From the NCBI RefSeq assembly GCF_003918875.1, contig NW_025766181.1, forward strand, positions 558,001 to 622,000: DNA of 64,000 bases, given 5' to 3'. Each line of letters begins with the position of its first letter. Position 1 is the first letter of the stretch. The notes under the pieces are model-generated. The model was given only the letters and a program-made list of their open reading frames with translations, was not told where the DNA came from and searched no databases. Of the stretch, positions 6,057-56,351 are shown piece by piece. The DNA is from Haliotis rubra. Lineage: Eukaryota. A program made the position numbers and the translations under genes.

Positions 6057-6138
6057 TATAAAAGGGGATACGAGCGATACTATCTTCAGTCCACGAGTAT
6101 TTGCTTTGTACTGCGGCAGAAGTTCTACAGACTCAAGC
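6057..6138 (+). promoter_or_regulatory. TATA box + initiator + non-coding exon 1 of Gln-rich gene copy 1
   Basis: TATAAAAG at 6057, TCAGT Inr with A at 6088 (31 nt downstream), GTAAGT donor at 6139; conserved in all four copies. Confidence 0.75.
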
Positions 6139-7046
6139 GTAAGTACATTTTCTTTTGTTTTTCATACACACTCCTCCATGCAAATATCAGCTGTTTTGTA
6201 GAATTTGTTTTTGGTATTATTATTATAGGATATTTATATAGCGCACATATCCAGGCAACTAGTGCATGCTCAAGGCGCTGGTATTTTTCCCTCGATCATT
6301 GGATGTCAATCTCAACGGCACATCGTATTATCAATCTCAACTCCCTGGGGAGTATACATCCTTAGAATATCCTTAGAATTAAACCTACAGTTTCAAATGC
6401 CAGAAGTTAACATACGTTCATGCAAGGTCTGAACCGTTTGCCATTGTAAATTTCAAAACAATCCAAAGATGGGATAACAATTTGAAAAACGCCATGTATC
6501 TTCCCTGGCTTTATTAAGATAAAGCTTCAAAAAGTATCTGAGGATGTAAACATGTGTTTGAAAGTTCGCAAGAAATATAGCAAAAAAAAGTTTAACCACA
6601 GGAAACTACTTCCAGTAAAACCTGGTACCAGTATATATTTGTCCCTCAATTCCAAACACAATCAACATTTGAGTATACAAAGAAAGCCATCCTCAAGTGT
6701 TTGAATCAGTTTCCTGTATTAGTGTTCGCTATTAATGTTAAAATTCAACTTATATTTGTTTTACTGGAACGGAGGCTGTTGAAGGTGTCTGTAGTTCGTG
6801 TAGTTTTCTATATCAAAAAAGGTAATAACCACGAGATGACTTATGAACTGTACATATATATTTAAAAGCCACTTGTCTACCCTGATTTAAGTCATACCTA
6901 CCTTTCAGCAAAATCACAGACTATACCTTCCTATACAGCATAAACTGCGATCAGAGTTTCTATTTGATAAAACACCCCACCTTTACGATGGATTTATATT
7001 AACAGATCCGTTTGTTTGTAAAATCAATCTTTTTTCTTCCAGAAAA

Positions 7047-8352
7047 ATGAATACTCTTCAAATTCTCGTAGTTCTTATGGCAGTATGCTGTGCAAGTCAA
7101 GGGAGACATATCCGTAAGTGTAACCAAGTTGACAAATCTGTTATTTGATTTGTGAATTATGCTAAATTATACACGAAACCTAATCGTATTATTCTGCCAT
7201 CGTAAAGTACCTTGTTTTTATGTATGGTTGTTGTGTGTATGTTTAATCCCACAAATAAAACATCAAACATATATAATGATAAAAAAATTCATATTCCCAT
7301 GTAACATAATATTGACCTCTCCGCGAACACCTGTGAGCCATCTCTGTATTTCATTGGTCCATTTATGTGACTTTCACAACTGTTTTGCCCTTTCGCCCAA
7401 TGGATTCTGATTTGGCTGATAATCGAGGCGTTGACTTATGATACTTTCATAAAAGAGCTTCTATTTCCTATGATCTATTTTCTCATGTTTTGTTTGCAGG
7501 TTCCAGGCGTTTTGTAAACCAACCACCATCAGGTACGTTTTATACAAGGTCAAGAAATACAAATGAATATTCTGTCATAAAAGTCGAGCGGGTTTGTCTT
7601 TACGAATACAATAGGTATGCATAATAGGTGATATAGGTGACTAGAGATATACGTGATTACTTTGTCATATTACCTCACAACTTACATGTAACGGTGGGAA
7701 GACTGGTAATACATCATATATTACCCTACCCTACACTACGATATTAAAAGAACAAGGGGTGACGGAATGCTGAATATGATGTGGCTTGTTTGTGGTTCTT
7801 TCAGGTTTATTCCCGCCAGGCAACAATCATCTGGATATCCAAGCGATTATGGCACTCTTGAAGAATCCAATGATGATGAAAGGGCTTGGTCAGGTTAATA
7901 GTCAACAACAACAACAACAACCGCAGCAGCAGCAGCAACAACTAGGAACGGGTCAAATTCCACAAGCCGAAGTGACCCAACATACAAAGAATCAAGGACA
8001 AGTTCAGGGACAGACACCAACACAAAATGGAGGTCACGGTCAGCAAGGTCACACAAACAATGGTCAGACACAACAGGTCCCCGTCCCAGCTCCAGCTGCC
8101 AATACTCTAAAGACTGTCGATCCAATGCAGCAGCTTATGGGGTCTTCAAACATGTTCACCGACCCAATGTTTTTACAATACTTGGCGAGAAGGGTAAACA
8201 TGATGAAGCCCAAATACAGGAGAGGAGACTTTATCCCCCAAAAAGGCCTCTTCCCGGGAGGATATGTGATATCTGCTGATGGTAGTGATGCTGAAGTGAG
8301 GGACATATATGGAAGGTTGCACTCAATTGATGGTGGCATTTTCCAAGCATAA
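7047..8352 (+). CDS. Secreted Gln-rich low-complexity protein, copy 1 (215 aa; exons 7047-7113, 7500-7532, 7805-8352)
   Basis: Splices in frame via GT-AG phase-1 introns: MNTLQILVVLMAVCCASQGRHI-RSRR-FVNQPPSGLFPPG...polyQ...DGSDAEVRDIYGRLHSIDGGIFQA; signal peptide; AATAAA at 8568. Confidence 0.9.
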
Positions 8353-10379: not shown

Positions 10380-11797
10380 ACAGGAAAGCAAAAGTAACTC
10401 TGCATAACATAAAATTGCATAAAATGAAAGTTATTTGAAAAGTTATTAAAACAACCCTAAATAAACTTGAAGGAAGCACTTTGTTATCACGTATCGCGCG
10501 TGGCACGTGCACTTTGTGCACAATGAACTTACTTACTTTTTGTATGTTTTTTGACACCTGATATTGAAAATAGAAGAGCGGTTAATTATTCTCTTGCCTC
10601 TGAATGTTATGGGTAACACATTAATTTCAATCTCAACTGCACGTACTTCAGGCCACGGTTTACGGAAAATCGGCGTCTCCGCTCTGTGGGTATGCTGGAG
10701 ACTGCAATTGCCCAAAATGAAGTGGCCAGACAGTTTGGAGTCCATCGGAACACGTGTCTGTGGAAACGTTTTCAACAAAATGGGAACACGAGAGATTTGC
10801 CTCGGACTGGCCGTCCACGCGACGCGTGACATCACGTCAGCAAGACAACCACGTTCGGCTGACCCATATATGGAATCGAGCACAGACTGTCAGTTTGCCT
10901 GCTCGGACCATTCCTGGAATACGACCAATCAGTTCCAGAACTGTACGGAACCGACTGAGGGAGCACAACATCTGGCCCCGACGGCCTGCAATACGTCCAA
11001 TCTTGCTCCACGTTGTGCCTGGTGCAGACAGCTTCTACAATACAGGAGACAAGACTGGGATGCTGTTTTGTTCACTGACAAGTCGAGATATCATCTGGAC
11101 AGCACGGGTGTACAGAAGCCGAAGTGACTCGTGCGTTGTTCAACGTTGGCAGTTTGATGGCGGAGTGTTATGGTATGGGGAGTCATCACATCTCATGGTC
11201 GGACACATCTTGTCATTTTCAATGGCAGTCTGACAGGTCCGCGATACAGGGATGAGATCATTAGGCCACATGTGCAGCCGTTCATTCAAGGACAGAGACG
11301 ACACGCTTCAGCAAGATAATGCTCGTCCATAGGTGTTGTGACAGATGCCCTGAGAAAGCAGAGCATTCCGGTACTCTCCTGGCCAACTGTTTCCATCCCC
11401 TATCGAGCACACGTGGGATGCAATGGAGCAATGTTAACGTCAAGTTCAAAATCACCCATTGACGTTTGCTGAATTTCGGACAAGCGTTGGTTCAGACATA
11501 GAAACACATTCCCCAAGCTTTCTTCATCAATCGCCTTGTGTCGTCTATGTGTCGTCGTTGTCAAGGCTGCATCAACGCCAATGGCGGACACACGATACTG
11601 AATTTGTAGACTGACTTTTGACACCACATATCTTCAAGGGCGTGTTGCGATGATTAGTGGCAAAGCAAAAAGGATTTCAATATTATCCTGCCAACAGTTA
11701 AACAGTGATAAAGGACGACACCACGAATCATGTTATTATCTTTTTACATTCAAAAATGGCGTTACATCAAATACTGTACAGTTACTTCCTTCCAGTA
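10380..11797 (+). mobile_element. Decayed Tc1-like transposon B, copy 1 (ends approximate)
   Basis: Frameshifted pieces RRVTSRQQDNHVR, ISSRTVRNRLRE, DWDAVLFTDKSR, QQDNARP. Confidence 0.8.
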
Positions 11798-12420: not shown

Positions 12421-12503
12421 TATAAAAGGGGATACCAGCGATACTATCTTCAGTCCACCAGTATTTGCCTTCGTATTGCGGCAGCATTTCTGCAGACTCA
12501 CAA
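12421..12503 (+). promoter_or_regulatory. TATA/Inr + non-coding exon 1, copy 2
   Basis: TATAAAAG 12421, TCAGT Inr (A at 12452), GTAAGT donor 12504. Confidence 0.7.
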
Positions 12504-13071
12504 GTAAGTACATTTTCGTTGGCTTTTCATAATACATCTCCATGCTAATATCACATGTTTTGTAGAATATCCTTAAAATTAAACTGACAGTTATTATTCC
12601 ATTTCAAGTGTCACAAGTGAAAATACTTTCATGCTAGCTAGGAACACGGATCAAGGAATGTATCTGAGCATGTAACATTTCGTATGAAAGTTCGCAAGAA
12701 ATATAGTAATGCTGAGAAAGTTTGTCCCTCAATTGCAGACACAATGAACATTTGAGTATTAAAAGAAAACCACCCCAAAATGTCTTGCATCGGTTTCCTT
12801 TATTAAGGTTTGTTATTAATGTTTTCCTGGAACGGAGGGTGTTAAAAAGTCTCCAGTTCGTGTCAGTGTATAATCGAAGACTTAATAACCAAGAGATGAC
12901 TATATGAACTGCACATACATATATAAAATGAATTGATCTGCCCTGATAAAAGTTCTAAGTAAAATCACATTCCATACCTTTCTTTACAACATAGACTGCG
13001 ATCCTAGTTGATAACACACCCCACACGTATGATGGATTTACATTAACAAATGTGTTTGTTCTTCCAGCAAA

Positions 13072-14738
13072 ATGAATACTCTTCAAATTCTCGTAGTTCT
13101 TTTGGCAACATGCTGTGCAAGTCAAGGAAGAAATATCCGTAAGTGTTACCAAGTTGACAAATCTGTTGCGCGAATTAATGTTAAAACAAAACCAAATGGT
13201 ATTATTCTGACATCGTACATGTAAAATACCTTGTATTTATGTAGGGTTGTTGTGTATGTGTTTAATGCCGCGAAAGAAACATCATACATTATCCCCATGT
13301 AACATAATATCCCCGTTTACGGGAACACCTGTGTGTCATCACTGAATTTCAGTAGTCCATCAATGTTACTTCCACAACTGTTTTGCTTTTTGCGCCTAAT
13401 GGATTCTGATTTGGCTGATAATCGGCGTTGACTTATAATACATTCATAAAAGAGGTTCTATTTCCTGAGATGATATTTATTCCTGTTCTATTTGCAGGTT
13501 CCAGGCGTTTTGTAAACCAGCCACCACCAGGTACGTTTTATACATGGTCAATACATAAATTGTATATTCTGTCATGAGAATAAGGAAAATTGCGTATCGA
13601 TAATCTAGCGAGTGTACTCGCTGGTGTGGCTTGTCTTTACAAATAATATAGGTGGGTAAAGTGTGATGTAACTTCGTGTTCAAGATTATATCACTCATGT
13701 TACGACGTGCAACCACGTGATTATGTGTACATGACTAGGGCATTTCTGTACTCGTCTACTCTATGCCGGTTTACGACAACGAGCCCTTGGGATTCCTCAT
13801 TCGGACACAGAATACTGACACAGTCCAATGGTACTTTTGTTTAGCCCTAATGCTTCTTAGCCCTAGTACTTGTCGGACAGTCTAGTCTACCTTTAGAGGC
13901 GGTCACTAGAGATGTACGTGATTACTTCGACATATTACCCTTCAGCCTGCATATAACGCCGGGAAAACTGGAAATGTAATAAATTATACAGTGACAATAC
14001 GATATTAAGAGAACATAGGCATACAGAATGCTGAGTATTGTGTCGCTGTAAAACCTTCTTTGTGGTTCTTCCAGGTTTATTCCCGCCAGGCAACAACCAT
14101 CTCGATATCCGAGCGCTTATGGCACTCTTGAAGAATCCAGTGATGATGAAAGGGTCTGGTCAGGTTAATAGTCAACAGCAACAACAACAGCAGCAGCAAC
14201 AACAGCAACAACAACAACAACAGCAGCAGCAACAACAACTAGGAACGGGTCAAATTCCACAAGCCGAAGTAACTCCTCAATCAGCCCAAAATCAAGGTCA
14301 ACCTCAACCTGAGCCTCTTCCAACCCAGACGAAACCTCAAAACCCGCCACTGACCCAACATACAAAGAATCAAGGACAACTCCAGGGACAGACACCAACA
14401 CAAAATGCAGGTCAAGGTCAGCAAGGTCAAACAAACAATGGTCAGACACAACAGGCCCCTTTCCAGCTCCAACTGCCAATACGCCAAAGACTGTCGATCC
14501 AATGCAGCAGCTTATGGGGTACTCAAACATGTTCACCGACCCAATGTTTTTACAATACTTTCAACAATTCATGAGAAGGGTAGACAGGATGAAGCCCAAA
14601 TACAGGAGAGGAGACTTTATCCCCCCAAAAGGCCTCTTCCCGGGAGGATATGTGATATCTGCTGATGGTAGTGATGCAGAAGTGAGGGACATATATGGAA
14701 AGTTGCACTCAATTGATGGTGGCATTTTCCAAGCATAA
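13072..14738 (+). CDS. Secreted Gln-rich protein, copy 2 (exons 13072-13138, 13498-13530, 14075-14738); 1-bp frameshift in C-run at ~14456-14459
   Basis: Near-identical to copy 3; GCCCCTTT vs GCCCCCTTT splits the last exon into ORFs 14038 and 14502; pseudogene or homopolymer error. Confidence 0.8.
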
Positions 14739-19596: not shown

Positions 19597-19680
19597 TATA
19601 AAAAAGGGATACGAGCGATACTATCTTCAGTCCACCAGTATTTGCCTTCGTATTGCGGCAGCATTTCTGCAGACTCACAT
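19597..19680 (+). promoter_or_regulatory. TATA/Inr + non-coding exon 1, copy 3
   Basis: TATAAAAA 19597, TCAGT Inr (A at 19629), GTAAGC donor 19681. Confidence 0.7.
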
Positions 19681-20279
19681 GTAAGCACATTTTCGTTGGC
19701 TTTTCATAATACATCTCCATGCTAATATCACCTGTTTTGTAGAATATCCTTAAAATTAAACCGACAAGTATTTCCATTTCAAGTGTCACAAGTGAAAATA
19801 CTTTCATGCTAGCTAGGAACACGGATCAAGGAATGTATCTGAGCATGTAACATTTCGTATGAAAGTTCGCAAGAAATATAGTAATGCTGAGAAAGTTTGC
19901 CCCTCAATTGCAGACACAATGAACATTTGAGTATTAAAAGAAGGCCACCCCAAAGTTTCTTGCATCGGTTTCCTTTATTAAGGTTTGTTATTAATGTTAA
20001 AATTCCACTTATATTTGTTTTCCTGGAACGGAGGGTGTTAAAAAGTCTCCAGTTCGTGTCAGTGTATAATCGAAGACTTAATAACCAAGAGATGACTATA
20101 TGAACTGCACATTAAAACGAATTGATCTGCCCTGATAAAAGTTCTAAGTAAAATCACATTCCATACCTTTCTTTACAACATAGACTGCGATCCTAGTTGA
20201 TGAAACACCCCACACGTATGATGGATTTACATTAACAAATGTGTTTGTTTGTAAAAATCAATCATTTTCTTCCAGCAAA

Positions 20280-21942
20280 ATGAATACTCTTCAAATTCTC
20301 GTAGTTCTTATGGCAACATGCTGTGCAAGTCAAGGAAGAAATATCCGTAAGTGTTACCAAGTTGACAAATTGCGCGAAATAATGTTAAAACAAAACCAAA
20401 TGGTATTATTCTGACATCGTACATGTAAAATACCTTGTATTTATGTAGGGTTGTTGTGTATGTGTTTAATGCCGCGAAAGAAACATCATACATTATCCCC
20501 ATGTAACTTAATATCCCCGTTTACGGGAACACCTGTGTGTCATCACTGAATTTCAGTAGTCCATTAATGTTACTTCCACAACTGTTTTGCCTTTTGCGCC
20601 TAATGGATTTTGATTTGGCTGATAATCGGCGTTGACTTATAATACATTCATAAAAGAGGTTCTATTTCCTGAGATGATTTTATTCCTGTTCTATTTGCAG
20701 GTTCCAGGCGTTTTGTAAACCAGCCACCACCAGGTACGTTTTATACATGGTCAAGATATCAAATGTATATTCTGTCATGAGAATAAGGAAAATTGCGTAT
20801 CGATAATCGAGCGAGTGTACTCGTTGGTGTGGCTTGTCTTTACAAATAATATAGGTGGGTAAAGTGTGATGTAACTTCGTGTTCAAGATTAACTCACTCA
20901 TGTTACGACGTGCAACCACGTGATTATGTGTACATGACTAGGGCATTTCTGTACTCGTCTACTCTATGCCGGTTTACGACAGCGACCCCTTGGGATACCT
21001 CATTCGGACACAGAATACTGACACAGTCCAATGGTACTTTTGTTTAGCCCTAATGCTTCTTAGCCCTAGTACTTGTCGGACAGTCTAGTCTACCTTTAGA
21101 GGCGGTCACTAGAGATGTACGTGATTACTTCGACATATTACCCTTCAGCCTGCATATAACGCCGGGAAAACTGGAAATGTAATAAATTATACAGTGACAA
21201 TACGATATTAAAAGAACATAGGCATACAGAATGCTGAGTATTGTGTCGCTGTAAAACCTTCTTTGTGGTTCTTCCAGGTTTATTCCCGCCAGGCAACAAC
21301 CATCTCGATATCCGAGCGCTTATGGCACTCTTGAAGAATCCAGTGATGATGAAAGGGTCTGGTCAGGTTAATAGTCAACAGCAACAACAACAGCAGCAGC
21401 AACAACAGCAACAACAACAACAACAGCAGCAGCAACAACAACTAGGAACGGGTCAAATTCCACAAGCCGAAGTAACTCCTCAATCAGCCCAAAATCAAGG
21501 TCAACCTCAACCTGAGCCTCTTCCTAACCAGACGAAACCTCAAAACCCGCCACTGACCCAACATACAAAGAATCAAGGACAAGTTCAGGGACAGACACCA
21601 ACACAAAATGCAGGTCAAGGTCAGCAAGGTCAAACAAACAATGGTCAGACACAACAGGCCCCCTTTCCAGCTCCAACTGCCAATACGCCAAAGACTGTCG
21701 ATCCAATGCAGCAGCGTATGGGGTACTCAAACATGTTCACCGACCCAATGTTTTTACAATACTTTCAACAATTCATGAGAAGGGTAGACAGGATGAAGCC
21801 CAAATACAGGAGAGGAGACTTTATCCCCCCAAAAGGCCTCTTCCCGGGAGGATATGTGATATCTGCTGATGGTAGTGATGCAGAAGTGAGGGACATATAT
21901 GGAAAGTTGCACTCAATTGATGGTGGCATTTTCCAAGCATAA
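20280..21942 (+). CDS. Secreted Gln-rich protein, copy 3 (254 aa; exons 20280-20346, 20701-20733, 21278-21942)
   Basis: Intact spliced frame: signal peptide, RSRR, Q22 tract, Q/P/T/N linker, C-terminal DGSDA module. Confidence 0.9.
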
Positions 21943-35102: not shown

Positions 35103-35185
35103 TATAAAAGGGGATACGAGCGATCCTATCTTCAGTCCACCAGTATTTGCCTTCGTATTGCGGCAGCATTTCTGCAGACTCACAT
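35103..35185 (+). promoter_or_regulatory. TATA/Inr + non-coding exon 1, copy 4
   Basis: TATAAAAG 35103, TCAGT Inr (A at 35134), GTAAGT donor 35186. Confidence 0.7.
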
Positions 35186-35756
35186 GTAAGTACATTTTCG
35201 TTGGCTTTTCATAATACATATCCATGCTAATATCACATGTTTTGTAGAATATCCTTAAAATTAAACCGACAATTATTTCCATTTCAAGTGTCACAAGTGA
35301 AAATACGTTCATGCTAGCTAGGAACACGGATCAAGGAATGTATCTGAGCATGTAACATTTCGTATGAATGTTCGCAAGAAATATAGTAATACTGAGAAAG
35401 TTTGTCCCTCAGTTGCAGACACAATGAACATTTGAGTATTAACAGAAAGCCACCCCAAAGTTTCTTGCATCTGTTTCTTTTATTAAGGTTTGTTATTAAT
35501 GTTAAAATTCCACTTATATTTGTTTTACTGGAACGGAGGGTGTTAAAAAGTCTCCAGTTCGTGTCAGTGTGTAATCGAAGACTTAATAACCAAGAGTACA
35601 CCATATCAACTCGTAAAAGTTCTACGTAAAATCACATTCCATACCTTTCTTTACAACATAGACTGCGATCCTAGTTGATGAAACACCCCACACGTATGAT
35701 GGATTTACATAACAAATTTGTTTGTTTGTAAAAATCAATCATTTTCTTCCAGCAAA

Positions 35757-37390
35757 ATGAATACTCTTCAAATTCTCGTAGTTCTTTTGGCAACATGCTG
35801 TGCAAGTCAAGGAAGAAATATCCGTAAGTGTTACCAAGTTGTGTCTGTTATCTGTTGCGTGAATTAATGTTAAAACAAAACCTAATGGTATTCTGACATC
35901 GTAGATGCAAAATACCTTGTATTTATGTAGGGTTGTTGTGTATGTGTTTAATGCCGCGAAAGAAACATCATACATTATCCCCATGTAACATAATATCCCC
36001 GTTTACGGGAACACCTGTGTGTCATCACTGAATTTCAGTAGTCCATTAATGTTACTTCCACAACTGTTTTGCCTTTTGCGCCTAATGGATTCTGATTTGG
36101 CTGATAATCGGCGTTGACTTATAATACATTCATAAAAGAGGTTCTATTTCCTGAGATGTATTCATTCCTGTTCTATTTGCAGGTTCCAGGCGTTTTGTAA
36201 ACCAGCCACCACCAGGTACGTTTTGTACATGGTCAAGACATAAAATGTATATTCTGTCATGAGAGTGTACTCGTTGGTGTGGCTTGTCTTTACAAATAAT
36301 ATAGGTGGGTAAAGTGTGATGTAATTTCGTGTTCAAGATTAACTCACTCATGTTACGACGTGCAACCACGTGATTATGTGTAAATGACTAGGGCATTTCA
36401 GTACTCGTCTACTCTATGCCGGTTTACGACAGCGAGCCCTTGGGATGCCTCATTCGGACACAGAATACTGACACAGTCGAACGGTACTTTTTTAGCCCTA
36501 GTACTTGTTAGCCCTAGTACTTGTCGGGCAGTCTAGTCTACCTTCAGAGGCGGTCACTAGAGATGTACATGATTACTTCGACATATTACCCTTCAGCCTG
36601 CATCTAACGTCGGGAAAACCGTTAATGTAGTAAAGTATACAGTGACAATACGATATTAAAAGAACATCAGCATACAGAATGCTGAGTATTGTGTCGCTGT
36701 AAAACCTTCTTTGTGGTTCTTTCAGATTTATTCCCGCCAGGCAACAACCATCTCGATATCCGAGCGCTTATGGCACTCTTGAAGAATCCAGTGATGATGA
36801 AAGGGTCTGGTCAGGTTAATAGTCAACAGCAACAACAACAGCAGCAGCAACAACAGCAACAACAACAACAACAGCAGCAGCAGCAACAACTAGGAACGGG
36901 TCAAATTCCACAAGCCGAAGTAACTCCTCAATCAGCCCAAAATCAAGGTCAACCTCAACCTGAGCCTCTTCCAACCCAGACGAAACCTCAAAACCCGCCA
37001 CTGACCCAACATACAAAGAATCAAGGACAAGTTCAGGGACAGACACCAACACAAAATGCAGGTCAAGGTCAGCAAGGTCAAACAAACAATGGTCAGACAC
37101 AACAGGTCCCCGTCCCAGCTCCAACTGTTAATACTCCAAAGACTGTCGATCCAATGCAGCAGTTTATGGGGTACTCAAACATGTTCACTGACCCAATGTT
37201 TTTACAATACTTTCAACAATTCATGAGAAGGGTAGACATGATGAAGCCCAAATACAGGAGAGGAGACTTTGTCCCCCCAAAAGGCCTCTTCCCGGGAGGA
37301 TATGTGATATCTGCTGATGGTAGTGATGCAGAAGTAAGGGACATATATGGAAAGTTGCACTCAATTGATGGTGGCGTTTTCCAAGCATAA
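35757..37390 (+). CDS. Secreted Gln-rich protein, copy 4 (254 aa; exons 35757-35823, 36183-36215, 36726-37390)
   Basis: Intact spliced frame, same architecture as copies 1-3. Confidence 0.9.
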
Positions 37391-39972: not shown

Positions 39973-40123
39973 NNNNNNNNNNNNNNNNNNNNNNNNNNNN
40001 NNNNNNNNNNNNNNNNNNNNNNNNNNNNNNNNNNNNNNNNNNNNNNNNNNNNNNNNNNNNNNNNNNNNNNNNNNNNNNNNNNNNNNNNNNNNNNNNNNNN
40101 NNNNNNNNNNNNNNNNNNNNNNN
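39973..40123. other. Assembly gap (N run)
   Basis: Ns. Confidence 1.
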
Positions 40124-41563: not shown

Positions 41564-41830
41564 CCAGGTGAATGAATACATCATACATTAGATGCTGTTT
41601 GAAATGTAAATGATTTATAGGAACAATGATGACTGTTAAATGTAAACAAGTATTTAAGGTAATTGCTAATTTTGAAGTCATTCAGACAGGTGAATGAATA
41701 TATCAAACTCTTCAAAAATACTTTCAACAGAATAAAAAAACCAACAAGTATTTAAGGTAATTGCCAATTTTGAAGTCATTCAGACAGGTGAATGAATATA
41801 TCTAACTCTACAAAAATTACTTTCAGTAAA
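41564..41830 (+). repeat. Local ~100-bp tandem duplication
   Basis: AACAAGTATTTAAGGTAATTGC.AATTTTGAAGTCATTCAGACAGGTGAATGAATATATC twice plus a partial third. Confidence 0.75.
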
Positions 41831-44437: not shown

Positions 44438-44578
44438 NNNNNNNNNNNNNNNNNNNNNNNNNNNNNNNNNNNNNNNNNNNNNNNNNNNNNNNNNNNNNNN
44501 NNNNNNNNNNNNNNNNNNNNNNNNNNNNNNNNNNNNNNNNNNNNNNNNNNNNNNNNNNNNNNNNNNNNNNNNNNNNNN
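44438..44578. other. Assembly gap (N run)
   Basis: Ns. Confidence 1.
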
Positions 44579-44814
44579 TAACCTCGCATAAGGTAGAGAG
44601 AGTTTGGATGAATCAAAATAAATAATAAACCTGTCGGTCAAAAGAATATAAACAACAAAAAATTTAATGGTTATTTGATTCGACAGTCTCAGGTTTAGAA
44701 TATTTCGGCGACCTTTCAGGCTAATAACGTTTTGATAAGGTCTGTACATTTTTCGTCAAATCTTTTTTTAGTGCATCACTTCACTTCCTGCTCCTCTTTG
44801 CAGAACTTACGACA

Positions 44815-46981
44815 ATGACGTACTGGCGTTTCATCTTGTGTACTCTGGCGTTCTGTTGTGGGGCGCATGCGCAGCATGTTAGTGAAGCACGTACGTATTT
44901 TTTAAATTGTTTTGTTGCTTTGATGAGCCATCGAACGCTCATTCCGTAAGCTGTTTTCCCCAAGGAAGTGGCCGGCTGGTCATCACAACATTAGTTGTTT
45001 GATCAAAGTTATATGTGACAAATGAAATATTCTCATGGCAACTGAAAAAGGTCACGCTTCACTACCAACAAATGGCTTGACTGGCAAATGATATGTTTGT
45101 AGAAGAATGCTCAGAGTTCCTCATATCAAGGGAGATTTCTTAATTACAAAGTTATGAGACATTTATATCATTTTCAGGCGATTTCTAATACGTTAAATGT
45201 ATTGCTATTAAATATTTCAAATGAATTCATCTTTTATATCACCATCCCACTGTGGAAATATAAAAACACACTTATATTCAATGAGCGGTTGTTATTAAAC
45301 GTGATGATGTGGTAGAATAACATTTTCAGCGTCCAGTGCGTAAGGCTGCATATTTTGACCTTTCCAATGACATTTAATGAACTTAAAATTAATGACGCTA
45401 AATGTTAAATGATTTCTGCAATTCTGATTGCAAAAAGGTGCAGTTTCTTGAATACAATACTGATCTTGGATATCGCTGGTATGATAACTAATATAAGTAC
45501 GAGAAGGGACCCACGCACAAACTCAGGACAACAAAATACCATTTAGTTGCGTATTGAAAGAAACTGGTCCGTTCGTGTAAGGATTTACAGGGGACAGTTC
45601 ATGAAAATGAAGTAACGATTTCCAAAGCTAAGTAAATATGGTGTATTTATTTTGAAGGTATTCGCTCGCTCCTGCCCCAAAGCGTTGCCTTTAAACTGCT
45701 TCTTCTGAAACCACCCGCACCCAGCGGCAGCTTGTTGCCACAAAGAAAAGCCCCAACAAGCACACAGGCAGGATCCTTCAACGGAGGTCCGTTAATTCGA
45801 TCTGATCCACGACTTGGCTCTGGTTTGGTGCACCCTCTACTTGATCCTAATTATGGTAGCAACCAGTTCAATGGCGTTGGTGGTTACTCCGAGACCATCT
45901 CACCAACAGGTTTTCCCGAAGGTATATCTGGATCTGGCGCATTTGCTGATACTTCCGGAGGGTCTTTGGGTTTCACAGGAAGTAATCCGCTTGGTTTGCC
46001 TGGTATTGATTCAACCGGGCTTCATGGGAGTTTCATGGGGTCCGGGGGTTTACTTGGCGACATGACAGGAGCTGGGAATGCTGGGCTAGCCCTTGAACAA
46101 CTTTCAGGTGGATTTGGACAAGACCCGGTTGGCGATATATTCGGGACATCGGGACAGAGTGGAGGTCTTCTTGGACTGGACTTGACACCGGGTAGTCTTA
46201 CAAGTGTTTTTCCTGGTGGAGCGGACACACTAGCTGGACAACCTGAGAATTCACAGGGATTTGGCATGTCTATGGGGCAGCCTGGCGATTTTCTTGGTAC
46301 AGGTATGGGACATGTAGAGTAGAGTTTTGAGAGTAAGGCATTAATGTACCTTCCCGGTGCGGGTTAATATTTTGGTCACGTGGGTCTATCGGTTGGCAAA
46401 TCTTGGCTTGAAAGCTCACCTTTAGATGTTCATAGACTTCGAGTTTCTAAGTTTCGATGTTATCACTTTGAACCGAACATAATTTTGACCATTATTACGA
46501 TTTCAGAGCTGCAGAACGTTAACAGTGGAATGGGAATGAATATGTTTCCGGAAAGTATTCCAACTTCTCCACCTCAAACACAAATGGTCCCTACAAAACC
46601 TCCGACGAACACTGGTCTGCCGCAAGGGCTTACCTCGGGATCCGTAATGGCTCCGGTAGACAGGAAACAAATACAAAACAATGTTCGAGTTCCGTCGCAA
46701 AAATGCAGCCGAGTTTACCAAAATCTCGTCAAAATCCAACTGGAAAAGGGCCTGCTGTGGTCGGTATCGCAAATGGACAAATTCAAATGCCCCGTCGCCC
46801 AGCACCAATCGGAGTTGGACCACCTATCATTCAAGTAGGAACCATACTTCCCCCAAGTGCTGTGCTGCCTGATGGTGGAGTGGTGGTTCGTGTTGATGGC
46901 TCTGATGCAACCGTTCAGTCTCCCGGTGGAGTAGAAACGACCGTGGATGGAACTGACTTCAGCCAAGAATTGGTTGGCTGA
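44815..46981 (+). CDS. Secreted Gly/Pro-rich protein with C-terminal DGSDA module (exons 44815-44890, 45658-46302, 46507-46981); apparent 1-bp deletion in A5 run 46699-46703
   Basis: Signal peptide MTYWRFILCTLAFCCGAHA; phase-1 GT-AG introns join ORFs 45732 and 46380; adding one A gives PSQKMQPSLP and enters ORF 46703; AATAAA at 47214. Confidence 0.8.
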
Positions 46982-49830: not shown

Positions 49831-52800
49831 CTAAACACTGGAGCCAATAAAATCTGGTGCTCCACGATTGCCTCCATCTACCATGAAAGATCCAGCATTG
49901 GTGAAGCGAGAATTGCTGAAAGACAGACCATTCATTACAGATAACTCAGGTTGGTTAGGGTCCATTTGGGAAGGTGATGGTCCAGTCCCATCAGCAACGA
50001 TACGATCATTTCGGATTCGAACAGAATTTCCGTTTCTGTTTGCATTGCTATCTAATGGTGTAGAGCGATATTCGTTGTTGCTACCGTTCTGTCCGTTTAG
50101 CCGTGTCATTGTTCCAGCATCCATCATGACGGGTCCGTTCATGTCTGTGTATCCACGGGCATTCATGAAAGATTCGACATTCATATCCATCATTGATTGC
50201 CCAGACCGATTCGTATCAAATTGGGAAGGAGATCTTTCAGCATTATTTGTGTTGCGATTGATACTTGAAGGTGAATCGGCCCATCTTGACATGGGCATGT
50301 TAGATGGAGAGTCTCTGGTAAAGTCCATCATGTTCCTATTCGGACCAGATAACCCTACTGAGTCTTGCAAACCAAGATATCCTAAGTCCACCATCATAGA
50401 TCCAGCTGGATCTGTGAAGCCACGATTATCCATGAACGATTGCTCGTTCCGATCCATTTCTGGTGATCCTGATGGCGAAAAGACATTGCTATTCGTTGAT
50501 GAAAGCCTTCGTCCATTTCTAGAGGTCGATCGGTCAATATCCATGGGAGTTTGAGAAGTACCATCAAACATTGGATTCGACATATCGTTATTGCTGCCTA
50601 CACTGGATGATACGCCCATTTCGGCTGGTGCACTGACCAGTGGAACTTGTTCTATGGCCAAACCCAACATATCCAGATCGGCCTGATTCAAGTTGTTCAT
50701 GCGTGATCGACGTACATCCATTCGTCCGTCAAGAGTATCAAAGGATGTCGCAAATCCGCCAGGCCTGTTACCTCGACCACCAGAAATAGATGATCCACTT
50801 GGGTCCATCATACCAATAATATGTTGACTTGATGGGTTCGAGTCCTGTGCAGCCGGCCGGCTAAAGTCTCGGATCATTGACATGCTTCCATCAATATTAT
50901 TCAAGGAATTTGCAAACCCATCCATATTGTTCACCGTTTGCCCCTGGCCTCCAATCACAAAAGACCCTGTAGAATCCATCATGCCAATCATATTTTGTCC
51001 CAAATGTTGGAAATCTTGTGCAGCTGATCCTCCTATATTTCCCGTCATACCTCCGTCAGCAGTATTGAAGGAATTAGAAAACCCGTCAAGACTGTTAGTC
51101 ATTTGGCCTTGACCGCTAATCAGTGAAGAATCTTCAGCACCCATCACACTCATCAAATCATTTCCTTTTTGCTGAAAGTTCTTCGACATTGAATCTCTCA
51201 TACTTCCGGCCTGATTTCTGTCAATAGTATTTATGGATGTTGCAAATCCATCAATGTTGTTCCTCATTTGCCCTCGACCGCCAATTGTATTCAAGGAATT
51301 TGCAAACCCATCCATATTGTTCACCGTTTGCCCCTGGCCTCCAATCACAAAAGACCCTGTAGAATCCATCATGCCAATCATATTTTGTCCCAAATGTTGG
51401 AAATCTTGTGCAGCTGATCCTCCTATATTTCCCGTCATACCTCCGTCAGCAGTATTGAAGGAATTAGAAAACCCGTCAAGACTGTTAGTCATTTGGCCTT
51501 GACCGCTAATCAGTGAAGAATCTGCAGCACCCATCACACTCATCAAATCATTTCCTTTTTGCTGAAAGTTCTTCGACATTGAATCTCCCATATTTTCGGC
51601 CTGATTTCTGTCAATAGTATTTATGGATGTTGCAAATCCATCATTGTTGTTCCTCATTTGCCCTCGACCGCCAATCATAGAAGACCCTGTTGCATCCATC
51701 ATACCCAAAATATTCTGTCCCAACTGTTGAAAATCTTGTCCAGTTGATCCACCCATATTTCCTGTCACCCTTCTGTCCATAGCATCGAAGGAATTTGAAA
51801 ACCCATCAAGATTGTTCATCCTTTGACCATCCATCATTCCCATAAAATCGTTTCCTTGTTGCTGAAAGTCCTGTGCATTCGATCCACCCGCATTTCTGGT
51901 AAGTGGTCCATCTATAGTAGTTATGGATCCAAATCTGCCAAGTTTGTTCCTCATTTGCCCTCGGCCGTCATTCGTAGCAGAAGGTGTAGCATCCATCATG
52001 GTCATCATGTTTTGTCCGACTTGTTGGAAATCTTGTGCTGTTGACCCACCAATGTTTCCGTTCACAGTCCCACCTAAAGTATCCATGGATGGCGCAAATC
52101 TGTCAAGTTTGTTCCTCATGTCCCCAATCACGGAAGACCCGGAAGCATCCATCATACCGAGAATAGTTTGCCCTTGTTGCTGAAAGTCCTGTGCCGCTGA
52201 TCTGCTATCGGCCATCATTTCAGCCATGGGGTTTTGAAGATTTGGTGGTAGTTCGGCTGCATTTCCAATGGGGTCTGTTCTTCCAAATCCAACTGATTGC
52301 GGCTCGTTCATATATAACTGGTCTAAGGTATCGACATTGTTGACGCTTTGTCTGTCGGAATGCGGTACCGTGCCGTCCTGTCGACTGACCACCCATGACG
52401 GTTGCATGGGCATCGCTTGCCTTCCAGAAGGAACAAAGCTTATCTCTAGCACCTTAGCACCTCCCAGCATGTTGCTTGTTTCAGCGGCTAATATATCTGG
52501 TTCGGGCGTTGGGGAGAAGTTTGTATTCCCAGCATCCTGCAACGTTGGATTCCTAACAGCCACTTGATCACGCAGAGATGCCTGATTGCGAAGAGGACTT
52601 TGGTCACGACGAGGAACCTCATTACGGGGAGATGTCTGTTCACGGAGAGAGTTTTGATCACGTGGAGATGCTTGATTTCGACGGGAACCTTGTTCACGAC
52701 GGGAACCTCGATCATTGGAAGCTGCTTGCTGACGGAGAGTTGTTTGTTGTTCACGCTGAGACACTTGACTGCGGGGTGCTTGGTTACGAAGAGATGCTTG

Positions 52801-55433
52801 AGTTCGACGAGAAACTTGATCATTGGGAAATGATTGCTCACGAAGCGTTGTCTGATCACGCTGAGTTGCTTGGTTTCGACGCGATGCTTGATTTCGACTA
52901 GAACCTTGATCAAGACGAGAAGCCTGGTCATTTGGAAATGATTGCTGACGGACAGTTGTTTGTTGATCACGCTGAGACACTTGGTTGCGGGCTGCTTGGT
53001 TACGGAAAGTGGCTTGATCACGAGGAGAATTTGTTTGATCGCGAGGAAAACTTGTTTGATCACGACGGAATGTTTGATCTCCAGCAGATGCTTGATCCCG
53101 TTGAGGCCCTTGGTCACGAGATGTTTGATCACGACGAGAAGTTTGATCACGGGGAGATGTTTGATCACGGCGGGGAGCCTGATCACCATTAGACATGAAG
53201 GTGGTATTTTGTAGCCGAGTCATTTCCTTGGAAACGCGGGCATTTCCTTCTTGAGGACGCAGATTGTCCATTGATGCCGTGTTGATCTGCTCTGCTGACT
53301 CCATGTTTGACACGGTGGGAGTGTTTGTCTGTTGCATTGTCTGTCCCATGCGCCTTGAATTACGAACCATATTGGGAGTTTGCATCCTCTGTGTGGTTCG
53401 ACTTGGTGTTGGCATCATTGTCGGTGCTGGCCCTGGTGCTGCCGCGTTTGGAGTGGGTCGTCTCATATTCCGGAAACCACCAGGCTGTCTCGGGTAGAAG
53501 CGGCTACCCTGCTGCCTATTTCCCCCTGTGGGAAAACCTTGTCTAGACATTCTTCCCGGAAACGGCGAGTTGAATGGCCTTCTTCCAAAGCTGCCCCTAA
53601 AACTGTTGGGCCGACCTGAAAAAAACATTACAGGAACATTACTTAAAGTAATGCGGACACCATGCTGAACATTTGTCAGGAAATGGGAATCAGCCATTCT
53701 ACTGAGTAAGAGCATTTACATTTCTTCCAGACTCAACCTCTCCCTGGACTTATTGGCTAACATCAAACGCCAAAACGTGTAATTTGTTGTGGGATATTAT
53801 AGCGTTTCCCGAATGTGCTGAAATCTTGTGGTTTTTTAAGAAGAATCACATAACGTACCCATATCTCCCATGTGGGGAGGAAAGGGAAATCCAGGGGGGA
53901 ACGGCATTGGTCCAGCTTGTCGTCTGTGTCCTGAAATATAAGCGTGGATATTTGTGTGGATATTTGTTTTCATAACGGGAGAGACTCAGGTCACACAATT
54001 AGCTGCAGCACACACTATCTGATATGAGATAAAGAAGTCAGGCTGTGATGAGACGGAACTGACAACACTTGATGTTTGTTGTTGTTTTTGTTGTTGTTGA
54101 TTAACGTCGCGCTCAGCAATATTCCAGCTATATGGCGGTAGTCTGTAAATAATCGAGTCTGGACCAGACAATACAGTGTTCAACAACATGAACAAGTCAG
54201 CGAGCCTGACCACCCGATCTCGTAACTCGCCGCTTACGACAAGGATAGGTTACCTAAGATCAATTCTAAACCGGATTTTCACGGGTACCACAACACTTAA
54301 GACTGACCAATACACCTCGGAGAGTGCGGGTAAAACATATTACATATTGTTCAACGCGTCCAAAACATATATGCCCCTTAAATCAAATTGTATGGCCTCT
54401 TACTAATTAATTACACTACTGCCATGTTATGGAAACTATACAACTCTTCACGAATATTAGAAATGTGTGGGAAAAGAAAGTATATGGACGGTGTCCATTT
54501 TTTAATTAATAACTGCAACGTATGTTGTGAAATATGATTAGGTATATTCAACCTTCGCACATTCCAGCAAAAGTTTCTAGAACGTATCAGTTGGCTGGGT
54601 AATTTGAGGAAAACAGGACTCGATAACCATACCAGTTAAAATATTGATATCGTTTGATATGCAATGATAGCTACCATATCGTATTTAAATATATGCTGAA
54701 AAATAAATTCGTCATTCTCTTAACCATTTAACAACTATGATTCTCGATAACGTTTGGTTGCAACAGTATACTTCAACTCACGATGATGGTCTTCAGCTAA
54801 CTCTCCTCCAGAGGTTTGGGATAACATGTCTGCTTTGCCAGTCGCTGAAGAGAAAAGAACATATTGTCAGTGCTTTTGTCAAGTTCAGCCGAAGTGCTGT
54901 AAAATAAGTATACATCCGTGTTTGATGGGACTAAATATGTGACGTACAGTCGATGGCGATATATATTTGAGTCCTAGCTTACTTATCAGATAGACTAATA
55001 TATCGGATACTTTCAAACATTTACTAATTCTACAGATAATCCTTATATTGGCGTTTACTTGATCCTTGAAGTCGATTCACATGTTAAAATAGATCAACAT
55101 AGTTGAAATGATAAAAGAACAAAGATAAAATGCTAAAATAACATAGACCTAGTTGAAATGGAACGTACATTTATAAATAAATATACAAGTAAAACCTATC
55201 GATTTTTCAGGAATATTTTCTATCTCAACCTAGCTAACAAATAATAAGGATACTAAAACCCAAACAATACTGATGTTTACGTACTAGGTGTATGAACATA
55301 TACAGTCTATCTGTAATATTAAATGAAGTCAATCAGATAATTGTTCTAATCTATGAGTGTACTCACCATAAGTTGTCATACTTCCCAGAACGACCACGCC
55401 GAGTACCGTGAAAATCGTGTTTAATTTCGTCAT
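49831..55433 (-). CDS. Large secreted repetitive low-complexity protein, 1328 aa (exons 55433-55367, 54844-54782, 53930-53859, 53615-49831)
   Basis: MTKLNTIFTVLGVVVLGSMTTYA signal peptide; three phase-1 GT-AG introns splice in frame; RHRR site; RDQxS hexapeptide block; ~55-aa QDFQQ repeats; upstream donor at 56050. Confidence 0.88.
54071..54289 (-). mobile_element. SINE family B in intron
   Basis: Reverse match to 63537 copy, (CAA)n tail, TSD ACAACACTT at 54062-54070 and 54290-54298. Confidence 0.8.
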
Positions 55434-56351
55434 GATGTAAAACTGGAATATTAAACAGGCAATATTTAAGAAAACTGTTCCACTTGATGCAAATCGTCAA
55501 TATCAACACTGCCTATATTAGCCAACTATGGTAAAAGAGTAAGGTCCCTTTGCATATGAAAGATGTTTCTGTTAGTAATCATGCGTCGTCGATAAGACTT
55601 CGATAGACGAAATCCTAGCAAACTGAAGGACGGCAGACAATAACAGATAAACGATATTTATTATAAAGATTACGCGGAGAAAAGTAGCATGAAACACATA
55701 AAATGACTCAGACCCTAGGGACTTAGTTACTGAGTGAATTGGATTTTAAGCCGCATTTAACAGTATCCCAGCAACATCATATGATGATATCAGAAGTTAC
55801 GGGAATGAACTCGGTCTTTCCTGATGATGGACTCACGTGTTAACCACTAGGTCCGCCCTCCCCGTCGCAATTTTCAAGATGTTTTAAAATTACCGCTCCG
55901 ATTATCATAATTTGAAACGAAATCTGCCTACATTTAACATGGGAATGGTGTTGTTATACTGCTACTGCACAAATACACGGTCACCCATTGGCATGTAAAC
56001 ACACGTTAAAAGATCTATTTAAGCACATACAAAAGAACAAAAGCACTTACAGTGGTCTCCACTGCTTGTTGGACCTTGTGGAGTGGATGTTGGACACTGT
56101 GAGCACGGTGTTTTTGTCTCCGTCGTGACGTAACACTGACCCACGTCACATGTAAAGCGAGCCACATTAGTACCATAAATCACACTTTAAGCGCCCGGGG
56201 TGTGACGATATATCGTTACAATTACACGATGGTCAGTTTTACCGATGACAGCATCATGAGTATCCTGCTTGACAAGTCAATCGATTGGCGTAATTAGCAT
56301 CGCGTGTCACAAAGCCTTCCGTCACTGCACAGTGTACTTGTACAGGGGAGT

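What the first reader, a model, noticed from the sequence alone, without database searches (positions are those of the whole stretch)
6057..56140. Six-gene cluster of secreted low-complexity proteins with one shared exon grammar
Seen: each gene has a splice acceptor a few bases before the ATG, a signal-peptide exon (67 nt in copies 1-4 and in the 1328-aa gene, 76 nt in the 44815 gene) and only phase-1 coding introns. An Arg codon split C|GT or C|GA opens RSRR, RHRR or degenerate RIRS, GTACGT donors recur, and I see no Cys in the mature chains. Inference: common ancestry with rapid replacement of low-complexity content, analogous to the vertebrate SCPP cluster. Likely extracellular materials such as shell matrix, periostracum or adhesive mucus, activated by proprotein convertase.
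Basis: partly seen in the sequence, partly recalled or inferred. Interest (0 to 1): 0.75.

Follow-up and report, generated by a model that had tools for sequence, protein, structure and literature searches.

The report
Abalone shell-matrix protein gene cluster
This stretch of blacklip abalone genome holds tandem genes for secreted, cysteine-free, disordered proteins; relatives of five were found in abalone shell, the sixth is a conserved gene missing from the H. rubra and H. rufescens gene calls I saw, and the type of cluster is already known in molluscs.

Summary
The window is Haliotis rubra. Each has a signal-peptide exon ending in phase 1 and a split Arg codon.

Copy 2 and g5 each carry a frame break as assembled.

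c1-c4 and g5 are true paralogs. They share a roughly 45-residue C-terminal beta-rich domain (GG.V...DGSDA.V....G.....DG). Three more paralog types in the H. rufescens cluster have it too.

In the published H. laevigata shell proteome, orthologs of the c-type were found with 2-5 peptides. One peptide starts right after RSRR and spans an exon junction. The g5 ortholog was found only in trace, and a further paralog ranked as a major nacre protein.

g6 keeps an open frame of over 1100 codons in three species (dN/dS 0.34, rubra vs cracherodii). It is absent from the gene calls I saw for H. rubra and H. rufescens. It has the exon grammar but no detectable sequence link to the family, and I found no g6 peptide in the shell data.

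A convertase motif R-x-[KR]-R is conserved in c-type and g6 but not in g5. Cleavage is untested.

Verdict: new member of a known kind, a lineage-specific tandem cluster of shell-matrix genes.

The parts
6057..6138 (+). c1 TATA box and non-coding exon 1 (transcription start not determined)
   Evidence: The equivalent c3 block is 77% conserved with H. rufescens, including TATAAAAG and the GTAAGT donor.
7043..7113 (+). c1 signal-peptide exon (ATG 7047, 67 nt coding, phase 1, donor GTAAGT)
7500..7532 (+). c1 33-nt exon: split Arg C|GT, then SRRFVNQPPS (RSRR convertase motif), donor GTACGT
7805..8352 (+). c1 last exon (181 codons plus stop). It lacks 117 nt of the Q/P-rich middle found in c2-c4. 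C-terminal domain at about 8215-8349.
12421..12503 (+). c2 TATA box and exon 1
13068..13138 (+). c2 signal-peptide exon (ATG 13072)
13498..13530 (+). c2 RSRR exon
14075..14738 (+). c2 last exon with a 1-nt deletion near 14460. The ORF as assembled stops at 14574. The C-terminal domain continues in another frame to the stop at 14736-14738.
19597..19680 (+). c3 TATA-like box (TATAAAAAAG) and exon 1 (donor GTAAGC)
20276..20346 (+). c3 signal-peptide exon (ATG 20280)
20701..20733 (+). c3 RSRR exon
21278..21942 (+). c3 last exon (220 codons; run of 21 Gln; C-terminal domain at about 21805-21939)
35103..35185 (+). c4 TATA box and exon 1
35753..35823 (+). c4 signal-peptide exon (ATG 35757)
   Evidence: The public gene call of 254 aa spans 35757-37390.
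36183..36215 (+). c4 RSRR exon
36726..37390 (+). c4 last exon
39973..40123 (.). Assembly gap 1 (151 N), intergenic between c4 and g5
44438..44578 (.). Assembly gap 2 (141 N), 225 nt upstream of the g5 signal-exon acceptor. The exon 1 and promoter of g5 were not located.
44804..44890 (+). g5 signal-peptide exon (ATG 44815, 76 nt coding, phase 1, donor GTACGT)
45658..46302 (+). g5 Gly/Leu/Ser-rich exon (split Arg C|GT, then IRS...; phase 1-1). It contains the sequence LLLLKPPAPSGSLLPQR, found as a peptide in H. laevigata nacre.
46507..46981 (+). g5 last exon. The frame breaks near 46697. The C-terminal DGSDA domain (about 46844-46978) lies in the other frame.
56051..56140 (-). g6 non-coding exon 1 (donor GTAAGT after 56051) and proximal promoter. 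The transcription start is not determined.
   Evidence: This upstream block is 77% conserved in H. cracherodii.
55367..55442 (-). g6 signal-peptide exon (ATG 55433, 67 nt coding, phase 1)
54782..54844 (-). g6 63-nt exon: acidic propeptide segment, phase 1-1, ending in C|
53859..53930 (-). g6 72-nt exon: split Arg C|GA, then HRR|QAGPMPFPPGF... (RHRR motif; RQKR in two other species)
49831..53615 (-). g6 last exon, 1260 codons with no Cys. In order: a basic P/R/G-rich start, RDQ-type 36-aa repeats, a unique conserved block, G/S/N/M/D-rich repeats (including a 390-nt unit x2 at 98% identity, 50898-51675), and an S/N/M-rich tail.

Best explanation
The window covers most of a Haliotis-restricted tandem cluster of genes for secreted, cysteine-free, largely disordered low-complexity proteins.

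Shown:
- c1-c4 and g5 belong to one paralogous family.
- The family has a shared gene plan: a non-coding exon 1; a signal-peptide exon ending in phase 1, usually with C| so that an Arg codon is split; an optional mini-exon that starts with a furin-type R-x-[KR]-R; and one large last exon.
- All members share a conserved C-terminal domain of about 45 residues, predicted to be a small beta sheet.
- In H. rufescens the cluster runs: 157-aa gene, 157-aa gene with RKRR, 255-aa gene, one c-type gene, g5, then g6 on the other strand. H. rubra has amplified the c-type to four copies.

Likely mechanism (inferred):
1. The proteins are secreted by mantle epithelium.
2. The signal peptide is removed.
3. 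In c-type and g6, a convertase removes a short N-terminal propeptide.
4. The disordered Q-, G/L/S- or P/V-rich chains become part of the nacre organic matrix.
5. The conserved C-terminal domain provides a specific contact. The partner is unknown; it could be chitin, another matrix protein or mineral.

The low-complexity middle changes quickly by slippage and indels, while the two ends are held by selection.

g6 is a real, conserved gene of more than 1100 codons, absent from the gene calls of two species. It has the same exon plan and sits in conserved synteny, but it lacks the family domain. Its membership and its tissue of expression remain open.
For: - Species and record: a 100% identical H. 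rubra protein.
- Exon plan. The H. rufescens RefSeq protein matches the c-type splice model.
- Same plan in a paralog outside the window: 73-nt signal exon ending C|, a 43-nt exon starting GT AAA CGG AGA (RKRR), phase 1.
- C-terminal domain: 16 invariant columns across 8 sequences of 3 types. The profile search returns only Haliotis family members, one unidentified eukaryotic contig and a Logan contig, plus repeat-rich proteins, at least one of them bacterial.
- Structure: AlphaFold2 gives pLDDT of about 80 over four short strands.
- Cluster order and synteny.
- Shell proteome (Mann et al. 2018, PMC6003135): idb_28907 with 2-5 peptides in all six nacre fractions and in prismatic-layer fractions; idb_16318 listed as a major, nacre-only protein; one CLC_8292 peptide identical to g5.
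- Selection: dN/dS 0.20 in the C-terminal domain against 0.57 in the middle.
- g6: dN/dS 0.34 (rubra vs cracherodii), with open frames of 1138 and 1228 codons in two other species.
- Convertase motif kept while the residue at P3 varies: RSRR and RFRR in c-type, RKRR in the 157-aa paralog, RHRR and RQKR in g6.
Against: - All shell evidence comes from a sister species and from a deep proteome that also lists actin and tubulin.
- The c-type is a minor component (about 0.02-0.18% iBAQ), and g5 is at trace level.
- No expression data could be examined.
- I found no g6 peptide with about 17 probe strings, and g6 has no detectable sequence similarity to the family.
- Phase-1 introns at signal-peptide ends are common in secreted proteins generally (PMC1626468).
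- c2 and g5 are not intact ORFs as assembled.
- The role of the C-terminal domain is a guess. Foldseek found no significant match.
Confidence: 0.75

Rival explanations
1. g6 is an unrelated neighbouring gene for a secreted repetitive protein. Its resemblance to the family is only the generic layout of metazoan secreted-protein genes.
For: The C-terminal domain profile finds nothing in g6 or its orthologs. Excess of phase-1 introns at signal-peptide ends is general (PMC1626468). The 67-nt length match is not conserved; it is 70 nt in two other species. I found no g6 peptide in the shell proteome.
Against: The Arg codon is split C|GA exactly in front of a conserved R-x-[KR]-R, as in c-type and the RKRR paralog. 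From general knowledge, an exon ending in C at a donor site is rare. g6 sits tail-to-tail with g5 in three species. It has zero Cys in 1260 residues, like the rest of the cluster.
Confidence: 0.5
2. These are general mantle mucus or extrapallial-fluid proteins that are trapped in shell by accident and have no specific role in building it.
For: Abundance is low for the c-type and trace for g5. The same proteome contains cytoskeletal contaminants.
Against: The c-type was recovered in every nacre fraction under three washing protocols, including a hypochlorite wash. The paralog idb_16318 passes the 'major protein' threshold and was found only in nacre.
Confidence: 0.2
3. The frame breaks in c2 and g5 are real mutations, so these two are young pseudogenes or truncated alleles rather than assembly errors.
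For: As assembled, both lose the conserved C-terminal domain. The public H. rubra model for g5 stops early at 246 aa.
Against: The c2 break is one base in a C-run, and the sequence after it is 99% identical to c3 with the stop still in place. The H. laevigata g5 transcript encodes a full-length protein of about 400 aa. From general knowledge, single-base indels in homopolymers are typical of long-read hybrid assemblies.
Confidence: 0.4
4. The genes encode peptide-hormone or neuropeptide precursors, suggested by the signal peptide followed by a basic cleavage site.
For: An R-x-[KR]-R sits directly after the signal peptide.
Against: There is only one such site per protein, and no R.[KR]R occurs inside any large exon. 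Peptides from both the N- and C-terminal ends of the long chain were recovered from shell. The mature chains are 180-1280 residues of low-complexity sequence.
Confidence: 0.03

Closest known systems
Lineage-specific tandem clusters of mollusc shell-matrix protein genes, such as Shematrin, N19, N16 and MSI60-related in Pinctada fucata (Takeuchi et al. 2016, PMC4759782; reviews PMC4897951, PMC5400390)
   Same: Tandem duplicates of secreted, repetitive, low-complexity, fast-evolving proteins found in shell. Copy number differs between close species, and the family is restricted to one lineage.
   Different: The sequences are unrelated. The abalone family is tied together by a conserved C-terminal beta domain and a conserved exon plan. 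Its members have quite different compositions (Q-rich, G/L/S-rich, P/V-rich).
Uncharacterised H. laevigata shell proteins idb_16318, idb_28907/idb_36084 and CLC_8292 (Mann et al. 2018, PMC6003135)
   Same: These are the orthologs or paralogs of the window's c-type and g5 genes. Their peptides match the window's exons.
   Different: That paper does not mention idb_28907 or CLC_8292 in its main text. It lists idb_16318 only as 'Uncharacterized'. I did not see it describe a family, a shared domain, a gene structure or a genomic cluster.
Vertebrate SCPP gene cluster (enamel, dentin, milk and saliva proteins)
   Same: A tandem cluster of secreted disordered proteins for mineralised and other extracellular materials. 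Gene structure is conserved while the coding content is replaced.
   Different: There is no homology. From my own knowledge, SCPP genes have phase-0 introns and an SXE phosphorylation motif and descend from SPARCL1. Here the introns are phase 1, no SXE motif was seen, and a folded C-terminal domain is kept.
Pif/BMSP nacre proteins, processed at a dibasic site (RMKR; PMC11291548 citing Suzuki et al. 2009)
   Same: Precedent for a nacre matrix protein that is cut at an R-x-K-R type site.
   Different: Pif is cut internally into two functional halves and carries VWA and chitin-binding domains. Here the site lies a few residues (c-type) or about 24 residues (g6) after the signal peptide, and cleavage is unproven.

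Membership tests
Haliotis C-terminal 'DGSDA' domain family (unnamed; idb_16318, idb_28907, CLC_8292 types) | Match to the C-terminal domain profile (GG.V...DGSDA.V....G.....DG) | tested here: met
   c1-c4 score E 1e-37 to 1e-43 and g5 scores 6e-25 in the six-frame scan. The alignment has 16 invariant columns. For g6 this feature is NOT met: there was no hit at any threshold.
Haliotis C-terminal 'DGSDA' domain family | Signal-peptide exon ending in phase 1, with the next exon opening on a split codon (Arg, C|GN, in most types) | tested here: met
   c1-c4, g5 and g6. Also the H. rufescens 255-aa gene (58 nt, C|GC) and the RKRR paralog (73 nt, C|GT). In g6 the split Arg lies one exon further downstream.
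Haliotis C-terminal 'DGSDA' domain family | Position in the conserved cluster | tested here: met
   In H. rufescens the order is 157-aa, 157-aa, 255-aa, c-type, g5, then g6 reversed. The g5/g6 pair is also found in H. cracherodii. The one H. cracherodii c-type gene found lies about 430 kb away on the same scaffold.
Mollusc shell-matrix proteins (working definition: identified by MS in cleaned shell extract) | Peptides recovered from shell matrix | tested here: inconclusive
   By ortholog in H. laevigata only. The c-type was found with 2-5 peptides in nacre and prismatic layers. g5 was found with 1-2 peptides at trace level. I found none for g6. No H. rubra shell data are available.
Proprotein-convertase (furin-type) substrates | R-x-[K/R]-R motif in an accessible position after the signal peptide | tested here: met
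   RSRR in c1-c4, RFRR in H. cracherodii, RHRR and RQKR in g6. It is not met in g5, where RIRS is conserved in three species.
Proprotein-convertase (furin-type) substrates | Cleavage actually occurs at the motif | not testable with these tools
   The shell peptide FVNQPPPG... starts right after RSRR, but that boundary is also a tryptic site.
Vertebrate SCPP family | Phase-0 introns throughout, an SXE motif near the N-terminus, and descent from SPARCL1 | tested here: not met
   All coding introns here are phase 1. There was no Pfam or other homology. The SCPP criteria are from my own knowledge.
Neuropeptide or prohormone precursors | Several dibasic sites flanking short peptides | tested here: not met
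   There is only one basic motif per protein and none inside the large exons.

The most novel reading that the evidence does not exclude
g6 is a highly derived member of the same family. It kept the ancestral exon plan and convertase site but replaced all its coding content, including the C-terminal domain. On that reading, one ancestral gene gave rise by tandem duplication and content replacement to at least six shell-matrix proteins of quite different composition. That would be a mollusc counterpart of the vertebrate SCPP story. The conserved C-terminal domain would be a new small fold that anchors disordered chains in nacre.
Probability: 0.3. Interest if true: 0.6.

Novelty: new member of a known kind. 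Interest (0 to 1): 0.5.

Why it matters
The work gives a genomic and evolutionary frame to several 'uncharacterized' abalone shell proteins: one family, one conserved C-terminal domain, one exon plan and one cluster. It shows copy-number change between close species (one c-type gene in H. rufescens, four in H. rubra). It flags a conserved 1328-codon gene that is absent from the gene calls I saw for two species and truncated in a third. It also offers a tractable case for studying how the low-complexity parts of biomineral proteins turn over while their ends stay fixed. It does not reveal a new principle, because tandem, lineage-specific, fast-evolving shell-matrix gene clusters are already described in molluscs.

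Tried and rejected
- Pfam scans of all large exons found no family.
- A profile HMM of the C-terminal domain, run against g6, its H. cracherodii ortholog and 2000 shuffles, gave no g6 hit.
- I tested a possible link between the g6 repeats and a metagenomic protein with DGSDAT repeats (P0011). BLASTP gave E 0.058, not significant, so I dropped it.
- The repeat-rich hits to the domain profile are beta-propeller-type repeats (DGGYVVTW..QDGS...IYGQRF..DGT); at least one is bacterial (Paraburkholderia). I treat this as motif-level resemblance only.
- Foldseek of the domain model against the PDB found nothing significant: best E 0.015, TM below 0.5.
- The H. asinina shell proteome supplements had no match to family motifs.
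- About 17 g6 probe strings gave no g6 peptide in the H. laevigata supplements. Several of those files are truncated, and the g6 repeats would give very long Met-rich tryptic peptides, so this is weak negative evidence.
- I searched for the non-coding exon 1 of g5 by comparison with H. rufescens and H. cracherodii and did not find it.
- I looked for an ortholog of the H. rufescens 255-aa gene or the 157-aa genes inside the window. None is present.
- Spliced (joined-exon) protein models were not submitted to any search. All searches used single exons by reference or database proteins by id.

Full report
IDENTITY AND GAPS

The window is 40% G+C with two N runs, at 39973-40123 and 44438-44578. 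A g5 exon is 100% identical to a Haliotis rubra protein. The look-up places the window on GCA_003918875.1 contig QXJH01000216.1. That look-up fetched a locus from the same assembly (L003). I used only its gene-call table. I did not read it for the gaps and I filled nothing in.

Both gaps are intergenic and no coding exon touches either. The flanks on both sides align to H. rufescens in the same order and orientation (window 37096-37710, 40534-40715, 41775-42215, 44679-44738 and 44797-44899 against L001 12045-12699, 14129-14318, 16566-17062, 19064-19122 and 19209-19311). The ORFs listed across gap 2 are runs of X. Gap 2 lies 225 nt upstream of the g5 signal-exon acceptor, so the non-coding first exon and promoter of g5 cannot be placed.

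THE OBSERVATION

Self-BLAST shows four tandem copies. Direct reading and scripts confirm the exon plan.

- In c1-c4 a TATA box and a short non-coding exon come first. An acceptor lies 4 nt before the ATG. The signal-peptide coding part is 67 nt and ends with C|. A 33-nt exon then completes the Arg codon (C|GT) and reads SRRFVNQPP., with a GTACGT donor in phase 1. A single large exon follows.
- In g5 the acceptor is 11 nt before ATG 44815. The signal part is 76 nt with a GTACGT donor, the split codon is C|GT (Arg), and the next residues are IRS.
- In g6, on the minus strand, ATG is at 55433 and the signal part is 67 nt. Two phase 1-1 exons of 63 and 72 nt follow. The second opens with C|GA (Arg) and reads HRR|QAGPMP. 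The last exon has 1260 codons, which gives 1328 residues in total.

No Cys occurs in the mature parts of c1, c3, c4 and g6, or in g5 when read in the conserved frames.

- c2 has a one-base deletion in a C-run near 14460. As assembled it ends out of frame at 14574. The remainder is 99.1% identical to c3 and reaches the normal stop.
- The last exon of g5 changes frame near 46697. In H. cracherodii the same exon is one open frame. The public H. rubra model instead reads through the donor at 46302 and stops at 246 aa.

I left both breaks as they are and searched the pieces separately. These are not toxin or effector genes.

- GTACGT occurs at only three independent donor sites. In the other species the g5 and g6 donors read GTATGT.
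- The g6 signal exon is 70 nt in H. cracherodii and H. rufescens, so the match at 67 nt is a coincidence.

WHAT THE GENES ARE

Pfam finds nothing in any of the large exons. Word searches by single exon found only Haliotis proteins.

- For the c-type: H. rufescens (243 aa) and H. cracherodii (225 aa).
- For g6: a 739-aa H. cracherodii model.
- For g5: the H. rubra model.

The H. rufescens RefSeq protein reads ...NIRSRRFVNQSPADLFP..., which matches the c-type splice model.

c-type, g5 and a 255-aa H. rufescens neighbour share a C-terminal block (tblastn E 1e-5 to 1e-8 in small databases). An alignment of eight sequences has 16 invariant columns.

I searched a profile of that alignment against 1.84 billion representatives, which gave 13 hits at E up to 0.001.

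- The three known types.
- Two further H. rufescens and H. cracherodii proteins of 157 aa that were not in the profile (E 2e-6 and 1e-5).
- One ORF on an unidentified ENA contig and one Logan contig.
- Long repeat-rich proteins whose beta-propeller-type repeats resemble the motif; at least one is bacterial (Paraburkholderia).

No other named mollusc genus was among the hits.

AlphaFold2 predicts four short strands at pLDDT of about 80 for the last 45 or so residues. Foldseek finds no significant match.

THE CLUSTER IN OTHER SPECIES

In H. rufescens all genes lie on one strand in this order: 157-aa gene, 157-aa gene, 255-aa gene, one c-type gene, then g5. g6 follows on the opposite strand. H. 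cracherodii has the g5/g6 pair. The one c-type gene I found there lies about 430 kb away on the same scaffold.

The paralogs outside the window follow the same exon plan.

- One 157-aa gene has a 73-nt signal exon ending C|, then a 43-nt exon GT AAA CGG AGA... (RKRR|FAQQQP) in phase 1, then a last exon.
- The 255-aa gene has a 58-nt signal exon ending C| followed by GC (Arg).
- The other 157-aa gene has a 22-residue signal sequence close to that of the c-type, and its signal exon joins the last exon directly.

The c-type promoter and exon 1 are 77% conserved in H. rufescens. The g6 upstream block is 77% conserved in H. cracherodii.

Taken together, the common ancestry of c1-c4 and g5 is well supported. 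H. rubra has amplified the c-type: c2-c4 are 97-99% identical to each other in the last exon, and c1 is 94% identical to them.

SHELL PROTEOME

The H. laevigata shell proteome (Mann et al. 2018, PMC6003135) contains three relevant entries.

- Entry idb_28907 (244 aa) has four peptides: FVNQPPPGLFPPGNNHLHIR (preceded by ...NIRSRR, and spanning the exon 3/4 junction), ALMALLK, GLFPGGYVISADGSDAEVR and the C-terminal LHSIDGGVFQA. It was found in all six nacre fractions and in prismatic-layer fractions, at about 0.02-0.18% iBAQ. Sibling entries idb_36084 (c1-like) and CLC_13596 share these peptides. The paper's main text never mentions idb_28907 or CLC_8292.
- Entry idb_16318 is the ortholog of the 255-aa paralog. 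It is listed in Table 1 as an uncharacterised major protein found only in nacre.
- Entry CLC_8292 carries the peptide LLLLKPPAPSGSLLPQR, identical to g5. It was identified from 1-2 peptides at trace abundance. Its 440-residue frame implies a full-length protein of about 400 aa.

I found no g6 peptide with about 17 probe strings. Several of the files are truncated, and the g6 repeats would give very long, Met-rich tryptic peptides, so this is weak negative evidence.

g6

The last exon is open for 1260 codons in H. rubra, 1138 in H. cracherodii and 1228 in H. rufescens. Between H. rubra and H. cracherodii, dN/dS is 0.34 at dS 0.57, and repeat-number differences produce 282 gap columns. The signal exon and the R-x-[KR]-R exon are conserved in position.

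g6 is missing from the gene calls returned for the H. rubra and H. rufescens loci, and it is truncated to 739 aa in H. cracherodii.

The domain profile finds nothing in g6. Its link to the family therefore rests on four points.

- The exon plan.
- A split Arg in front of a conserved basic motif.
- The absence of Cys.
- Conserved adjacency to g5.

Excess of phase-1 introns at signal-peptide ends is a general feature (PMC1626468). From general knowledge, an exon ending in C at a donor site is rare, which adds some weight. I rate membership at about even odds.

CONVERTASE SITE

Arg at P4, a basic residue at P2 and Arg at P1 are kept while P3 varies. The variants are RSRR in H. rubra, H. rufescens and H. 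laevigata; RFRR in H. cracherodii; RKRR in the 157-aa paralog; and RHRR or RQKR in g6. This pattern argues for selection on the motif.

Cleavage itself is unproven, because the shell peptide boundary is also a tryptic site. A dibasic cut in a nacre protein has a precedent in Pif (PMC11291548).

In g5, RIRS is conserved in three species, but it is not a convertase consensus. It aligns better with the RIIW/RILW start of the 255-aa paralog.

EVOLUTION

For the c-type, comparing H. rubra with H. rufescens, dN/dS is 0.20 in the C-terminal 75 codons. It is 0.57 in the low-complexity middle, which also has 17 gap columns. The main g5 exon gives 0.46.

COMPARISON WITH KNOWN SYSTEMS

Tandem, lineage-specific, fast-evolving shell-matrix gene clusters are described in Pinctada and Lottia (PMC4759782). 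This cluster is a new example of that kind, with an unusual conserved C-terminal domain. The SCPP comparison is an analogy only.

NOT DONE

I did not submit joined (spliced) protein models to any search or fold. I worked exon by exon, by reference, or with database proteins by id. 

Noticed in passing
window 23343-31518: A 3.64-kb unit carrying Mutator-like transposase ORFs is present twice in tandem (23789-27428 and 27422-31060, 99.5% identical). It is flanked by roughly 455-bp direct repeats (23343-23797 and 31061-31518). An ORF at 24062-24463 matches the zinc-binding loop of a His-Me homing endonuclease. This insertion explains why the c3-c4 spacer is 15 kb rather than 7 kb.
   Followed up: partly
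window 10564-11233, 15994-16629(-), 17971-18441, 31811-32242(-), 33516-34193, 42529-43299: Tc1/mariner-type transposase fragments (DDE_3, HTH_Tnp_Tc3_2) lie in several spacers between the gene copies and between c4 and g5. The c2-c3 spacer is 92-95% identical to the parts of the c3-c4 spacer that flank the large insertion.
   Followed up: partly
window 56474-57694 (-): A reverse-transcriptase fragment (RVT_1, just below the Pfam cut-off) lies directly upstream of the g6 promoter region.
   Followed up: no
window 50898-51675 (-): The g6 repeat region contains a 390-nt (130-aa) unit repeated twice at 98% identity. This is either a very recent internal duplication or an assembly effect. Repeat numbers differ strongly from H. 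cracherodii.
   Followed up: partly
window 8221-8229, 21811-21819, 37259-37267 (approximate; the c-type KYRRGDF motif): All H. rubra c-type copies carry an RGD tripeptide just before the C-terminal domain. It reads KGE in H. rufescens and H. cracherodii, and KGD or RGD in H. laevigata, so it is not conserved.
   Followed up: partly
L006 4432-4854 (ENA ERZ25071447 ctg82341): A 140-codon ORF ending in the same C-terminal domain sits on a 42-kb contig of 35% G+C with no DNA similarity to the window. It probably comes from another eukaryote, so the domain may extend beyond Haliotis.
   Followed up: partly
P0007, P0008, P0016 (long repeat-rich proteins; P0007 is from Paraburkholderia): Their tandem repeats (..DGGYVVTW.S..QDGS...IYGQRF..DGT..) resemble the abalone C-terminal domain (GGYVISADGSDAEVRDIYGKLHSIDGG). 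This may be convergence, or a shared blade-like beta motif.
   Followed up: no
L004 compared with L002 (H. cracherodii JAJLRC010000024.1): The one c-type gene I found in H. cracherodii lies about 430 kb from the g5/g6 pair. In H. rubra and H. rufescens the distance is about 7 kb. Its public model also skips the RFRR mini-exon and starts at an internal Met.
   Followed up: partly
window 56115-56150 (-): Just upstream of g6 exon 1 there are two CRE-like half-palindromes (TGACGT and ACGTCA), seen by eye.
   Followed up: no
window 49831-55442 (-); L009 16730-23376: g6 does not appear among the gene calls returned for the H. rubra and H. rufescens loci, although its open frame exceeds 1200 codons in both.
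   Followed up: yes
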